Position numbers and translations under genes: made by a program
Origin: Tubulanus polymorphus
Taxonomy: Eukaryota; Animalia; Nemertea
NCBI RefSeq assembly: GCF_964204645.1
Contig: NC_134032.1
Coordinates: 10,714,275 to 10,778,274 of the forward strand
DNA length: 64,000 bases
Direction of reading: 5' to 3'
Notes under the pieces: model-generated
What the model was told of the DNA's origin: nothing
What the model saw: only the letters and a program-made list of their open reading frames with translations
Database searches by the model: none
Shown: positions 55,862-64,000 of the stretch, in pieces
Layout of the letters: every line of letters starts with the position of its first letter
Numbering within the stretch: position 1 is the stretch's first letter

Positions 55862-56079
55862 TAGGCTAAAAAAATGGATACCTTGTTTCTACGCTCTGCT
55901 GAGCTTTACACGTGACCTAGCCGGCCGGATCCCTACATTATTTCTTGTTTAAATCGTGATCAATTTTACCATAACAGACCCGGCCGCTATAGAGAAATGA
56001 ACTGTTTACAAATTTTATTATATTTTCCAAAAATGACCCAGCCGCTGCGGAGAAACAAGGTATCATTTTTGTTTAGCCT
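55862..56079. mobile_element. MITE with ~33-bp imperfect TIRs
   Basis: taggctaaaaaaatggataccttgtttctacgc ... gcggagaaacaaggtatcatttttgtttagcct. Confidence 0.7.
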
Positions 56080-59929: not shown

Positions 59930-60330
59930 CGCAGGGAAACAAAGGAATACAGAATCAAACATGTTTTATCTCTCGGAAACATCGTTCCCCAAAAAAATGT
60001 TTCTCGTTTCTCATAAATGCACACGAATAGGGAAACGCTCGGATACATGTTTCTGTCTCCATGTTTCCCTGCATCGTGTGCGTTGGGTTTCAGAAACAAT
60101 GAAAGGCTAACAACGTCTCTCGTAAACCCACACAAAGCAAGGATACGCTCGGAAACATGTTTTTCTCTTATGTTTCCATGTTTTCCTGCATCACATGCGT
60201 TTGGTTTTAGAGGCGAGAATAAAAGACTTCCAATGTCTCTCATAAACGGACACAAAGCAGTGAAACGCTCGGAAAAATGTTTCTGTCTCCTGTTTTTATG
60301 TTTCCCTACGTCGTGTGCTTTTGGCTTTCC
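59930..60330. repeat. ~110-120-bp degenerate tandem repeat downstream of the homeobox stop
   Basis: ctcggaaacatgttt...catgtttcc.tgcatc.tgtgcgtt recurs 3-4 times. Confidence 0.8.
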
Positions 60331-60353
60331 TCTCCCTTTGGAACCAGAAAAAT

Positions 60354-61374
60354 TTACATCGTCGGCCGCAGTTGTTCCGTTTCCTTTTTCCACTTCGAAC
60401 GTCTGTTCTGGAACCAAATTTTGATGACTTTCTCCGACAGGCCGAGTCGATTGACCAGTTCCTCGCGTCGACCGGCGTCGCCTAGATACATATTCATGCG
60501 GAACTCGTATTCGAGAGTTTGTATCTGGTAATTGCTAAAATTCGTACGCGGACTACGGAAACTATGACCGACGCCGACACCTGCGAAAGCGGCAGCGGGA
60601 CTGCTGAATGCCGCCGCGCCACCGACTCCTCCGGACGACTCAACTACAAAAAAGAAAATGTTACAATTAGTGGGAAATTTAGAGATATAACAAGGTGGTA
60701 GCCTGAGACTCAAGTGTCGCAGCTAAGTCAGATTTGGCATGAAGTTGATAAAGTTCATTATTTCCCCAGTCATTTAGCTTCGATCTGTTAAATTTCAACT
60801 CAAAACTGTAGAATTTGTTCCAATTTGCCGATTGCGCAGTCGAGACTTAAATCCAAACAGGATTAAAATTTTCTAGACTTGGTCTTGGCCAACCAGGCAA
60901 GGATATTTTCTTGCAGGGATCAGCACGGTGAAATTATAGTAGGATGGTTTACCCTCATCTATGCTATGACCTAAAAACATTTTTCGCTCAAATGCCAAGT
61001 ACTCTGCCAAGTGCTTTCAGGATTATACCCAACTAAGCACTAATCAGGGCCGGAATCCAAAATCTGTTCAAAAGTAAGTACTTTTTTCGGACTTTGTCAG
61101 ACTCGCTACGAACCCTGCTTACTCAATTCAATTTCTCAATCGAGTTAGACCCCAGGTTAAAGTTAATACCAGTCTATAAAACCGGACTTCCTAGATGATA
61201 TTTCAAACTAACCCGGTTCGGGAGAGTAGTCGTCGTCTTCGCCTTCAGGGTCATAGTTCGGGTCTTCCTCGTATTTTTTCTTCCTCTTATTACTGGCTTG
61301 TTGTTGTTGTTGTGTCGAAAACGGGCGACCACTGAACCGTCTCTCGTATCTATCGTAATGCTGATAAAAATCAC
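60354..61374 (-). CDS. Homeodomain-encoding 3' cassette (2 exons; 5' part of gene outside window)
   Basis: Exon 61374-61213 (162 nt, phase 1 to 1: DFYQHYDRYERRFSGRPFSTQQQQQASNKRKKKYEEDPNYDPEGEDDDYSPEP) joins exon 60643-60354 (phase 1: ...FRSPRTNFSNYQIQTLEYEFRMNMYLGDAGRREELVNRLGLSEKVIKIWFQNRRSKWKKE...*). Confidence 0.85.
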
Positions 61375-62134
61375 CTGCAATTTAAAATCACGTATTTTCT
61401 AAATCTGATGACTCTGCACAAGTACGCCAGGGGTTAGAACTCCAGAAAACTTTCATTTGTTCTCTCTAATTCGAACTTAGTTTAATTCGAAAGGGAAAAT
61501 ATGGACTGTTTTATAGGCGAGTTATGCCTTAAACCCAAGGGTTTATCTAATTGATTATGAATTGAATAAACCCCCCAGGTTAAAGGCTAAAATGGTCTGT
61601 AAAACCACACCAGCAAATTTCTATAAATAGCTTCATGGGATGGAGAGATCCATACCTCCTCCAGGCACTACCCAGAATGTCCATTTGCGCAACAATTGCT
61701 CATCATTTGGTCCATCTCTTGTGGAATTGAACCCATCCTCCTTACCCAAATCAAACTCATATAATCAGGTATCACTCAAACACAGAAAACACAATGGAAT
61801 AAGTCGAGGCAAACTTGATTTATTCAACTCAGAATCTGTACAGGTTCCTGAAGTTCATTGATCTAATGGAAGCTTCAAAGCGTTTATTAAAAGGGACTTG
61901 GTTGATAACATATCCATCGCAATATTGTACTATTGACTTGGTCATAATTGACCCATCACAGCAGTTGATGAGATAATTTTAGGATCTACGATTCCTTAGA
62001 CTTTTTTTTAGAAAAGCAGTATATTACAGTAGGTCAAAAATTATATCCAATCAAGTCATCAGACTGTCGGCGGCTGACAACTCCCACAGTCTGAAAGGTT
62101 GATGGCGATGTGACACTATGAACACACCCTCAGA

Positions 62135-62292
62135 GAGTCCATACATATCCTTGGAGACCCAATACATCCTCAAAGACTCCAAACACACCCTCAGAGAGTC
62201 CCAACACACCCCCAGAGAATCCCAACACATCCTTAGCGTCCCAATGCATCCTCAAAGACTCCACACACACCCTCAAAGAGTCCCGCCAACAC
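62135..62292. repeat. Degenerate ~21-bp tandem repeat (cacaccctcagagagtccc)
   Basis: About 7 copies directly after the zinc-finger stop codon. Confidence 0.75.
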
Positions 62293-62296
62293 ATCT

Positions 62297-62580
62297 TTAC
62301 AGTCCGAGATTCATAGTTTTCAGTTCGTCGAGAATCTGCGAATGGTTTCGTCTCATGTGAGCTTTAAGCGTATCGAGTCGCGTGTACTGAGTAGCGCAGA
62401 TCGCGCATTTGAACGCTTTACCCATCTGCACGTGTTGTACGAGCACGTGGCGTTTTAAATTGAAATTGTTCGCGCACACTTTATTGCACAGATGACACAC
62501 GAACTTATCCACTCCGCCGCCGCCGTTGTTGTCGTCATGGAAATGACCTTGAAGTGGAGCGAATGGATTAAGAAGGTCAC
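62297..62580 (-). CDS. Terminal exon encoding a C2H2 zinc-finger pair (alternative last exon)
   Basis: Acceptor cattccag| at 62580, phase 1, 284 nt to stop: FVCHLCNKVCANNFNLKRHVLVQH-VQMGKAFKCAICATQYTRLDTLKAHMRRNH. Confidence 0.85.
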
Positions 62581-63407
62581 CTGGAATGACAAGGAAGAGA
62601 TAAATTTAGAAGAAAACAACAACGGCTTTTATTGTCTGCTCGCAATGGAAAGGGTTAACGATCAATAGACATTTTCAATATTCGAAAACTCTCAATACAT
62701 TTGCTTCATTCTTTTGTAATTCCAGGTGACCTTCTAGTGTTGCTAGGATTTAGAATAGGCTAAAACAATTTGACTACTGGAGGTAGTTGCCCAGTAGCAT
62801 CAGAGAAAACCCTCAATTCACTAATGTACCTAAATCCAACACTCTCAGATGAAAATGATACTAAGAAGGATGACTGTTCCGTATACACCATGCACCTGAA
62901 CCTGTGCTGTAAGTCTGGTGTTTTGTCGGTCAAGAGATATTTCGGACAAGATTTTGTGCTCTAAATTCTATCCACAGAAGTTCAAGAAGTTGAAAAGACA
63001 ACAAATGAAAACAGAACGACACAATTTAGGAAAAATGATATAAAAATTTTGATTATTATTATTGGGCGAATAGTTTTTACAAGTAAAATTATTTTTCGGA
63101 GAATGACACGATTTAAACTTTATCGATATAGAATTTTCATCATTATTAGTCTCAAAGTTTTACAAATACAACAGCTTAATTTGGATGACCAGGGACTGCC
63201 CAGATATCTTTGAATTGATTAAAATGCGAAAATAAGATAATAATAGTTTACACGGTTCCAGGTTAAATGGACCAAATATTTCATCCGAATTAAGTAAAAA
63301 TCCGGATTAAAAAATTTGAATCAAGCAAGTTCAACAACTGTACAACTGTCATTCTTCGGTGGATATTCATTTCGTTTTCGATTACGGAGTCTTTTTCGAT
63401 CGTTCGT

Positions 63408-63880
63408 TCAATTTTGAAAGTTGTGCATTCCGACGAGCGGAGGAACGGCAGGCGGAGGATGCTTCGAATCGACGTGCGTTTTGAGGTTATCCGACCGCGA
63501 GAAACTACGCTCGCAAAACCGGCACTGATATCGCGTTTTGTCGAACATGTGAACGCCGGCGACGTGTCGATTCAGATTGAACAATTTACTGAACAATTTA
63601 TTACAAATCCGACAACGGAATCGCTTCAGGGCCGGCGGCGCTCCTCGACGACCGTCGCCGAACACCGGCGATCTGATGAACTCGACTTTATATAAAGATA
63701 AGTCCGACGACGTCGACGCAGCGGTCGGCGGATCGAGGCGACCGCGCTCGACGGGATTCTGTAACGCCTCGTACGGATCCGGCGCGCACCGATGACTCAT
63801 CGTCAAAGAATCTTCGTCCTTGTAATCCGTAGTTTCCAGATAAATGTCTGCGTTGTTGCCATGGTGATTGGCTCTCAGTC
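63408..63880 (-). CDS. Terminal exon encoding a second C2H2 zinc-finger pair (alternative last exon)
   Basis: Acceptor tttttcag| at 63880, phase 1, 473 nt open to stop: FRCRICNKLFSKLFNLNRHVAGVH-MFDKTRYQCRFCERSFSRSDNLKTHVDSKH. Confidence 0.87.
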
Positions 63881-64000
63881 CTGAAAAATGTCATATGGAA
63901 ACTACGGATTACTGAAATGCGTATGGCTGCGTGTATTCACTACGTGCATTAGGAAAAATAAAACATTACATGTGTATGAATATAGAAGATGGCTGTCTCT

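What the first reader, a model, noticed from the sequence alone, without database searches (positions are those of the whole stretch)
63822..63912. Perfect 17-bp hairpin pairs the branch-point region with coding sequence and loops out the zinc-finger 3' splice site
Seen: 63822-63838 (gtaatccgtagtttcca) is the exact reverse complement of 63896-63912 (tggaaactacggattac). In the transcript the intronic arm lies at -32 to -16 from the acceptor at 63880 and contains a branch-like GUAAU. The other arm is coding (within LETTDY), and the AG lies in the 57-nt loop. Established: RNA pairing controls exon choice in Dscam1 and other mutually exclusive clusters. Inference: a local structure weakens this proximal acceptor so distal cassettes can be chosen.
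Basis: partly seen in the sequence, partly recalled or inferred. Interest (0 to 1): 0.8.

Follow-up and report, generated by a model that had tools for sequence, protein, structure and literature searches.

The report
Hairpin enclosing a zinc-finger exon's acceptor
A perfect 17-base-pair RNA hairpin really does enclose the splice acceptor of one alternative zinc-finger end-exon of a ribbon-worm gene, and several sister exons carry similar hairpins; it probably tunes how often this exon is used, but that has not been tested and a harmless replication accident remains a serious alternative.

Summary
63822-63838 is the exact reverse complement of 63896-63912, and the pairing extends to 20 nt with one mismatch. 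The pair is unique in the genome, far beyond chance, and forms with probability about 0.99 in every context folded.

It sits on the minus-strand transcript of a lola-like, BTB-less zinc-finger gene that this scan had already found at other loci of this genome. The 5' arm covers -32 to -16 of the intron. The 3' arm encodes LETTDY. The AG is in the 57-nt loop. The exon (E8) is a real coding exon: 5 of 6 haplotype SNPs are synonymous.

- E8 is the 8th of 9 alternative last exons, so it is not proximal.
- Neither arm has a competing partner, so this is not a Dscam-type docking/selector system.
- No relatives could be reached, so conservation and covariation are untested.
- No spliced reads were seen.

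Similar partner-specific helices span the acceptors of E1, E2, E3 and E9, and 3 of 17 acceptors in a paralogous cluster. That is more than controls give.

Best reading (0.45): a local acceptor-masking hairpin, probably born by template switching. Main rival (0.33): a neutral inverted repeat.

The parts
63896..63912 (-). 5' (intronic) arm of the hairpin, at -32..-16 from the acceptor. It extends to 63893 with one mismatch and contains the branch-like GUAAU (63912-63908).
63839..63895 (-). 57-nt loop. It holds the short polypyrimidine tract (cauuuuucag), the AG at 63882-63881 and the first 42 nt of the exon (63880-63839). A small 5-bp sub-hairpin places the AG at its tip in the MFE fold.
63822..63838 (-). 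3' (exonic) arm, coding L-E-T-T-D-Y. It extends to 63841 with one mismatch.
63408..63880 (-). E8: an alternative last exon with a phase-1 acceptor. It carries a 2-base codon remainder, then 156 codons with two C2H2 fingers, then a stop at 63410-63408.
   Evidence: ORF and frame. Pfam zf-C2H2 at 1.5e-9. The phase matches the constant-exon donor. 5 of 6 haplotype SNPs are synonymous.
62571..62592 (-). 3' arm of the neighbouring exon E9's inverted repeat. It contains E9's own polypyrimidine tract, its AG (62582-62581) and its first 10 exon bases.
   Evidence: 17 bp perfect, 21 of 22 overall.
62714..62735 (-). 5' arm of E9's inverted repeat, 121 nt upstream of its partner.
62297..62580 (-). E9: the last zinc-finger alternative exon, phase-1 acceptor, two C2H2 fingers.

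Best explanation
In the minus-strand pre-mRNA of a lineage-specific, lola-like zinc-finger gene, 17-20 nt of intron upstream of exon E8 pair with 17-20 nt of E8's own coding sequence. The intronic arm covers the usual branch-point zone.

The stem (about -27 kcal/mol) forms as soon as the exonic arm is transcribed, about 60 nt after the AG. It hides the branch-point region from SF1/U2 and traps the polypyrimidine tract and AG in a closed loop. This would lower the rate at which E8 is defined as the terminal exon, so a share of transcripts reads on to E9.

It is one of several self-contained hairpins, each pairing only with its own exon, that span acceptors in this array (E1, E2, E3, E8, E9) and set the relative use of the alternative ends. 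The repeat itself most likely arose by template switching at replication.

Shown: the repeat, its stability, its position, its uniqueness, the reality of the exon, and the recurrence at sister acceptors.
Inferred: that it forms in vivo, that it lowers rather than raises acceptor use, and that selection keeps it.
For: - Perfect 17-bp stem, P about 0.99 in all contexts, z = -5.3. None of 16 bp or more in 30 shuffles. Unique in the genome.
- It encloses the only in-frame acceptor with a usable polypyrimidine tract. That exon is under purifying selection: 5 of 6 SNPs synonymous.
- Outside a MITE-like element, the only other perfect local inverted repeat of 17 bp or more in 114 kb pairs the AG of the adjacent exon E9.
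- Duplex energy of upstream 45 nt against the first 70 exon nt: E1 -40.1, E2 -43.3, E3 -40.2, E8 -31.0. The random-position median is -15.2 and the 5% point -28.3. None of 149 pseudo-acceptors reaches -36.
- Swapped-partner control: 0 of 90 non-cognate pairs reach E1, E2 or E3, and 1 of 90 reaches E8.
- In an independent cluster of the same family, 3 of 17 acceptors beat all 272 non-cognate pairs.
- Pooled longest perfect stem of 10 or more: 3 of 36 acceptors against 1.2% of random positions, p = 0.009.
- Both inverted repeats are intact in contigs of a second sample, whose other haplotype differs at 6 sites just downstream.
- Hairpins at or near branch points are known to alter 3' splice-site use (PMC5224494). 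Pairings that repress early-transcribed exons balance exon choice in Dscam1 (PMC8791459).
Against: - There are no comparative data, so no conservation or covariation test was possible.
- No splice-junction evidence for E8. The RNA-like contigs run unspliced to 63905, and whether those runs are RNA is itself an inference.
- E4-E7 lack such helices.
- The paralogous array on contig 9 shows only a weak trend.
- In the cluster the overall distribution is not shifted; only the tail is.
- The constitutive exon-2 acceptor also has a specific local duplex of -33.1, so the feature is not confined to alternative exons.
- By energy alone E8 is only in the top 3% of random positions.
- There is no consistent sense-over-antisense stability.
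- Template switching can both create and maintain perfect arms without selection (PMC8794818).
Confidence: 0.45

Rival explanations
1. Neutral by-product. A replication template switch copied 17-20 nt from the opposite strand into a tolerant place (a weakly constrained intron stretch or linker coding sequence). The inverted repeat has no effect on exon choice, and its perfection reflects youth or repeated arm homogenisation.
For: - The arms are pure Watson-Crick and equally stable on either strand: -31.0 sense against -31.3 antisense.
- The short spacer is typical of template-switch products that create and maintain hairpins (PMC8794818, PMC10710096).
- The E8 region before the fingers has no detectable relatives, so it may tolerate replacement.
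- Local duplexes of this energy occur at about 3% of random positions.
- Four of nine exons in the array, and most exons in paralogous arrays, do without one.
Against: - Apart from one 12-bp palindromic repeat, the only perfect local inverted repeats of 12 bp or more in the array (62-77 kb) are the two at acceptors.
- E1-E3 carry 29-35-pair cognate-specific helices at the same place.
- The pooled excess at 36 acceptors has p of about 0.01.
- The repeat is present in every haplotype sampled, in a species with roughly 1% differences between haplotypes. A neutral repeat young enough to be perfect would more often still be segregating.
Confidence: 0.33
2. The hairpin marks the 5' end of a separate RNA. 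E8 would be transcribed or processed as its own unit starting in or just upstream of the stem. That unit could be a precursor joined to the constant exons in trans, as in fly mod(mdg4) and lola, or an intronic transcript.
For: - Contigs of two runs of one sample both begin exactly at 63905, inside the 5' arm. One run has no depth beyond it.
- E9's coverage likewise begins about 230 nt upstream of its acceptor, with zero depth at 62841-63174 where DNA reads are normal.
Against: - The two runs come from one sample, and their kind is not on record.
- Contig ends elsewhere in the same stretch coincide with SNPs (63724/63725). A variant at the CpG 63905-63906 would give the same break.
- The other run does have depth upstream of 63905.
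- Only 25 nt lie upstream of the acceptor, below the tool's own 31-nt bridging rule.
- No promoter or capping evidence.
Confidence: 0.07
3. An ADAR editing duplex. The intronic arm would act as the editing-site complementary sequence for adenosines in the LETTDY codons, recoding E8 before splicing.
For: An exon-intron duplex of 20 bp that must form before intron removal is the classical architecture of site-selective A-to-I editing (established knowledge). The exonic arm holds 7 adenosines.
Against: - No T>C (plus strand) differences were listed in 63822-63841.
- There is no excess of T>C over other changes in the RNA-like runs. However, 100 rows were not shown and there is no matched DNA.
- The stem is short for efficient editing.
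- This does not explain the helices at E1-E3 that pair polypyrimidine tracts.
Confidence: 0.05

Closest known systems
Hairpins at or near branch points and 3' splice sites that set acceptor use (human GH1, adenovirus E1A, the HIV-1 A3 site, the U2AF1 exon Ab stem-loop; listed in PMC5224494)
   Same: A local stem made of intron and adjacent sequence covers the branch-point zone of an alternatively used acceptor. In those cases stem stability correlates with 3' splice-site use.
   Different: Here one arm is coding sequence 42-58 nt inside the exon, so the whole acceptor sits in a 57-nt loop. The stem is a perfect 17-mer. The exon is one of nine alternative last exons. No functional test exists.
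Balancer RNA pairings in Drosophila Dscam1 exon 6 (PMC8791459)
   Same: The proposed logic is the same: pairings that hold back some variable exons so that choice is spread along an array, against 'first come, first served'.
   Different: Dscam1 balancers act by competing or cooperating with a common docking site and selector sequences over long range, among internal mutually exclusive exons. Here each hairpin is self-contained, no docking site or competing partner was found, and the exons are terminal.
Competing RNA pairings in 3' variable regions (Drosophila PGRP-LC, CG42235, Pip; PMC6191721)
   Same: Alternative 3' cassettes of one gene, with RNA pairings near the variable 3' splice sites.
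   Different: [quoted passage not shown] Here the pairing is local, not shared, and is expected to mask.
Template-switch mutations that create and maintain RNA hairpins (PMC8794818; de novo miRNA hairpins, PMC10710096)
   Same: A perfect inverted repeat with a short spacer, Watson-Crick on both strands. This is the most likely origin whichever function holds.
   Different: Origin says nothing about use. The event cannot be polarised without an outgroup.
Drosophila lola / mod(mdg4) alternative terminal-exon genes
   Same: A constant 5' part is joined to one of many self-contained zinc-finger last exons that share one splice phase.
   Different: No BTB domain; instead a lineage-specific N-terminal module with 35 further matches in this genome besides this gene's own. 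I know of no acceptor hairpins described for lola (own knowledge, not searched exhaustively).

Membership tests
Local 3' splice-site / branch-point masking hairpin | The stem includes or encloses the branch-point zone, polypyrimidine tract or AG of a real acceptor. | tested here: met
   The 5' arm lies at -32..-16 and the AG is in the loop. The acceptor is inferred from frame, phase and polypyrimidine tract. The exon is under purifying selection. The branch point itself was not mapped.
Local 3' splice-site / branch-point masking hairpin | Thermodynamically stable and dominant in the transcript context. | tested here: met
   Arm duplex -27.2 kcal/mol. P(stem) at least 0.92, mean 0.99, in 131-1251 nt contexts.
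Local 3' splice-site / branch-point masking hairpin | Disrupting the stem changes acceptor use, and the compensatory mutant restores it. | not testable with these tools
   This needs a minigene or genome editing.
Local 3' splice-site / branch-point masking hairpin | Conservation or covariation of the two arms in relatives. | not testable with these tools
   No orthologue found. The genome collections here hold no relatives of this animal (header).
Docking-site / selector competing pairings (Dscam1, 14-3-3, PGRP-LC type) | One shared docking sequence is complementary to selector sequences at each variable exon, so that pairings are mutually exclusive. | tested here: not met
   The best alternative partner of either arm in the pre-mRNA (60-83 kb) is -18.9 / -17.9 kcal/mol, against -28.9 / -27.4 for the cognate arm. 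The helices at E1-E3 are also cognate-specific.
Template-switch-generated inverted repeat | A perfect or near-perfect inverted repeat with a short spacer, Watson-Crick on both strands. | tested here: met
   17/17, 57-nt spacer. Sense and antisense are equally stable.
Template-switch-generated inverted repeat | A cluster of changes relative to the ancestor that is explained by a single copy event from the opposite strand. | not testable with these tools
   No outgroup sequence. The repeat is not polymorphic in the few haplotypes seen.
MITE / transposon terminal inverted repeats | Many copies of the arms and the internal sequence in the genome. | tested here: not met
   Only the two local exact matches; 1-2-mismatch hits equal the reversed-pattern control. 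The 221-nt surround is single copy. By contrast, the 19-bp inverted repeat with 156-nt spacer recurs at three loci.
miRNA / mirtron or other curated RNA family | A match to a curated model, or a stem of about 22 bp or more with a small loop. | tested here: not met
   No Rfam match at E up to 1 in 61500-64000. The loop is 51-57 nt.
ADAR editing-site duplex | A-to-G differences between RNA and DNA at adenosines in the duplex. | tested here: inconclusive
   None among the rows listed and no T>C excess. Rows were truncated, the kind of run is uncertain, and there is no matched DNA.

The most novel reading that the evidence does not exclude
Self-contained hairpins that pair each acceptor with its own exon form a family-wide 'balancer' system. 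It sets the odds of choosing among up to dozens of alternative terminal zinc-finger exons in a ribbon-worm-specific transcription-factor family. This would be an exon-choice code that evolved independently of the arthropod docking/selector systems, needs no shared docking site, and is continually renewed by template-switch mutations.
Probability: 0.22. Interest if true: 0.7.

Novelty: new member of a known kind. Interest (0 to 1): 0.45.

Why it matters
How a cell chooses one of many alternative last exons is understood mechanistically only for a few arthropod genes, where long-range competing RNA pairings do the work.

If these local hairpins tune acceptor use, a lophotrochozoan gene family would show a simpler solution that arose independently: each exon carries its own brake. 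It would also be a concrete case of template switching supplying regulatory RNA structure.

The family offers dozens of natural replicates (exons with and without hairpins), so the idea can be tested directly from junction counts. If instead the repeats are neutral, the locus still calibrates how often perfect exon-intron hairpins arise without function.

Tried and rejected
**Orthologue searches (all failed)**
- The word-index protein search with exon E8 gave only two generic zinc-finger hits.
- The same search with the 384-aa constant exon gave nothing.
- The exhaustive representative search was swamped by poly-zinc-finger proteins. The one hit covering the non-finger part (P0004) proved generic.
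- So no covariation test could be made.

**Reads**
- The single run search found no run on record as RNA.
- The single read-laying run gave no junction at 63880.

**Identities rejected**
- MITE or TE.
- Rfam family or miRNA.
- Docking/selector system.

**Analyses that did not help**
- The sense-versus-antisense stability test for RNA-level selection was uninformative.
- A wider masking measure (acceptor segment against +/-300 nt) was too noisy to discriminate.
- A regression-normalised sliding MFE ranks the E8 window only about 90th-170th of 5694. Long TE hairpins dominate that list.

**Technical failures**
Only 60 kb were analysed.
- One paper search failed on syntax and one timed out.

Full report
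**1. Observation**

The + strand 63822-63838 is the exact reverse complement of 63896-63912. With one mismatch the arms extend to 63822-63841 and 63893-63912.

- The minus-strand RNA of 63800-63930 folds to -36.5 kcal/mol, with this stem as its core. z is -5.3 against dinucleotide shuffles.
- The two arms alone give -27.2 kcal/mol.
- Each of the 17 pairs keeps a probability of at least 0.92 (mean 0.99) when 131 to 1251 nt of context are folded.
- Thirty dinucleotide shuffles of 114 kb never produced a perfect local inverted repeat of 16 bp or more.
- The arm is unique in the 268-Mb genome, and near matches equal the reversed-pattern control. The surrounding 221 nt are single copy. It is therefore not a transposon end.
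- Rfam finds nothing.

**2. What it sits in**

I fetched 50 kb beyond the window's end. This shows a minus-strand gene with three parts:
- an exon encoding a small N-terminal module that Pfam does not recognise;
- a long Q-rich constant exon whose donor (…accg|gtaagt, last base at window-continued 81061) leaves one base of a codon;
- nine stop-to-stop ORFs, each with two C2H2 fingers, each entered through a phase-1 acceptor.

The first exon bases are E1 77038, E2 73239, E3 71906, E4 70082, E5 67506, E6 66630, E7 65990, E8 63880 and E9 62580. The finding concerns E8.

Earlier notes of this scan describe the same BTB-less, lola-like family at other loci of this genome and name the animal as the ribbon worm Tubulanus polymorphus. 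I did not verify the species. I did confirm that the N-terminal module has 35 further matches in the genome besides this gene's own.

E8 is a real coding exon. A second haplotype seen in public runs differs at six sites in 63606-63724. Five of the six are synonymous third positions in the finger frame.

Within E8's ORF, 63880 is the only phase-compatible AG with a usable polypyrimidine tract.
- the 5' arm lies at -32..-16;
- the AG is in the 57-nt loop;
- the 3' arm encodes LETTDY.

GUAAU is a 4-of-5 match to the branch consensus at a normal distance. The branch point itself is unmapped.

**3. Is it alone?**

No. Among perfect local inverted repeats of 17 bp or more in 114 kb there are three.
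- One is this one.
- One (62571-62592 / 62714-62735, 21 of 22) pairs E9's own polypyrimidine tract, AG and first exon bases with intron 121 nt upstream.
- The third has 19-bp arms and a 156-nt spacer and recurs at other loci, so it is MITE-like.

Folding -90..+70 around each acceptor gives strong helices that pair the polypyrimidine tract with the start of the exon at E1 (z -5.9), E2 (-4.2) and E3 (-5.2), as well as at E8 (-3.95).

I then scored the duplex energy between the upstream 45 nt and the first 70 exon nt.

| Exon or control | Result |
|---|---|
| E1 | -40.1 |
| E2 | -43.3 |
| E3 | -40.2 |
| E8 | -31.0 |
| 32,536 random positions | median -15.2, 5% point -28.3, 1% point -37.1 |
| 149 pseudo-acceptors (pyrimidine tract + AGG) | none reaches -36 |

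Swapping partners among exons shows that the pairing is specific. None of 90 non-cognate pairs reaches E1, E2 or E3, and one reaches E8.

E4-E7 are ordinary. The 3' arms of the paralogous exons E2, E3 and E4 lie at different distances and in unrelated exon sequence. Complementarity to a homologous polypyrimidine tract was therefore acquired more than once.

**4. Independent loci of the same family**

- The paralogous array on contig 9 has 10 acceptors and shows only a weak trend: F1 is reached by 1 of 110 non-cognate pairs, F5 by 4 of 110, and the mean is not shifted.
- In 60 kb of the contig-8 cluster, 3 of 17 acceptors beat all 272 non-cognate pairs. They include 11- to 17-bp stems spanning the AG. 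The overall distribution is not shifted.
- I pooled all 36 acceptors and scored the longest perfect Watson-Crick stem. E8's 17 bp corresponds to 0.13% of random positions. Stems of 10 bp or more occur at 3 of 36 acceptors against 1.2% of random positions (p = 0.009).

The excess is real but modest, and it concerns a minority of exons.

**5. What argues for caution**

a) E8 is the 8th of 9 exons, not a proximal one.

b) There is no shared docking element. The best alternative partner of either arm in the 23-kb pre-mRNA is about 10 kcal/mol weaker. The Dscam1 analogy therefore holds only for the general idea of balancing (PMC8791459). It does not hold for the mechanism, nor does the PGRP-LC type of competing pairing (PMC6191721).

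c) The constitutive exon-2 acceptor also has a specific local duplex of -33.1.

d) The helices are nearly pure Watson-Crick, with no consistent advantage for the transcribed strand. That is expected if they arise as DNA-level template-switch products. Template switching can also keep arms perfect without selection (PMC8794818).

e) No relatives could be reached, so conservation and covariation are untested.

f) On the read evidence, the run search returned no run on record as RNA.
- Runs X2 and X3 look RNA-derived. Their depth is very uneven, they share holes where the DNA run X5 is even, and their contig totals are far below genome size.
- They cover 63254-63905 as a discrete unit, which is consistent with E8 being expressed.
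- Their contigs run 25 nt past the acceptor without a junction, and both stop exactly at 63905, inside the 5' arm.
- Contig breaks elsewhere in this stretch coincide with SNPs, so a variant at the CpG 63905-63906 is the simplest reading.
- Both inverted repeats (E8 and E9) are intact in these contigs. No difference was listed in the independent DNA run, but depth there was only about 4-9 and many rows were not shown.

**6. Most likely mechanism**

Hairpins at or near branch points are an established way of altering 3' splice-site use, and stem stability correlates with use in GH1 (PMC5224494).

Here the stem should form within about 60 nt of transcription after the AG. It would occlude the branch-point zone and close the acceptor into a loop. 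That would slow terminal-exon definition of E8 and let some polymerases reach E9.

With the polypyrimidine-tract-sequestering helices at E1-E3 and the AG-sequestering repeat at E9, the array appears to carry exon-specific brakes. I put this at 0.45. I put a neutral template-switch repeat at 0.33, an RNA-end or separate-unit reading at 0.07, and an ADAR duplex at 0.05.

**7. Novelty and score**

Structure-controlled acceptor use is a known kind, so this would be a new member. It sits in a new gene family and phylum, with an unusual exon-intron perfect stem.

Interest is 0.45. But no functional, expression or evolutionary evidence yet separates function from accident.

The gene family was found before by this scan on other DNA. 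First readers also noted the E9 hairpin and the array-wide idea.

Noticed in passing
window 63905 (inside the 5' arm): Contigs of two runs of one sample (X2 alternative-haplotype contig 63576-63905; X3 contig 63725-63905) both begin exactly at 63905. X3 has no depth beyond it. This could be a variant at the CpG 63905-63906, which would turn a G-C stem pair into G-U, or an RNA 5' end. Unexplained.
   Followed up: partly
window 61465-62811 and 62841-63174: The same RNA-like runs cover E9 continuously from about 230 nt upstream of its acceptor, unspliced and including the 5' arm of its hairpin, through to about 61465. They have zero depth at 62841-63174, where DNA reads are normal. This hints at a separate start, or at very fast loss of the E8-E9 intron.
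   Followed up: no
window 60354-60713, minus strand: A complete homeodomain ORF (Pfam 3.6e-21) lies downstream of E9. It has no in-frame ATG before the domain and has a phase-1-compatible acceptor (uuuuuuguag| at 60644/60643). It has zero depth in the RNA-like runs.
   Followed up: partly
window 63912-63913, minus strand: A second AG (gcauuucag|u) sits at the base of the stem, 31 nt upstream of the main acceptor. Using it would shift the frame into a 68-aa tail without fingers, with a stop at 63688.
   Followed up: no
window 55877-56064; window-continued 102911-103104 (L013); contig 9 locus (L031): A MITE-like element with 19-bp terminal inverted repeats (TGATACCTTGTTTCTCCGC) and a 156-nt spacer recurs at several loci.
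   Followed up: no
window 61004-61337, 60002-60335, 63175-63341: High-copy repeats, with DNA depth 10-100 times the unique level. The first has many 'opposite strands' joints at 61136-61164, so it is a palindromic repeat core.
   Followed up: no
L009:8760-8940 (window-continued 72760-72940), minus strand: A tandem array of units of about 33 nt (…CCCCGUACAGUCUACUGAGUGAGCGGGGUAU…) lies directly after E2's stop codon. It folds to -95 kcal/mol.
   Followed up: no
L012:8119 (window-continued 82119), minus strand: The acceptor of the constant Q-rich exon also has a partner-specific local duplex (-33.1 kcal/mol; 0 of 90 non-cognate pairs reach it). Acceptor-spanning pairing in this gene is therefore not limited to alternative exons.
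   Followed up: partly
L012:8636-8875 and 35 other genome places; contig 9 locus L029-L033: The unrecognised N-terminal module has 35 further matches in the genome, 16 of them in a 225-kb cluster on contig 8. The contig 9 paralogue has the same layout and, like this locus, has 7TM-receptor-like ORFs just upstream. This suggests a segmental duplication.
   Followed up: partly
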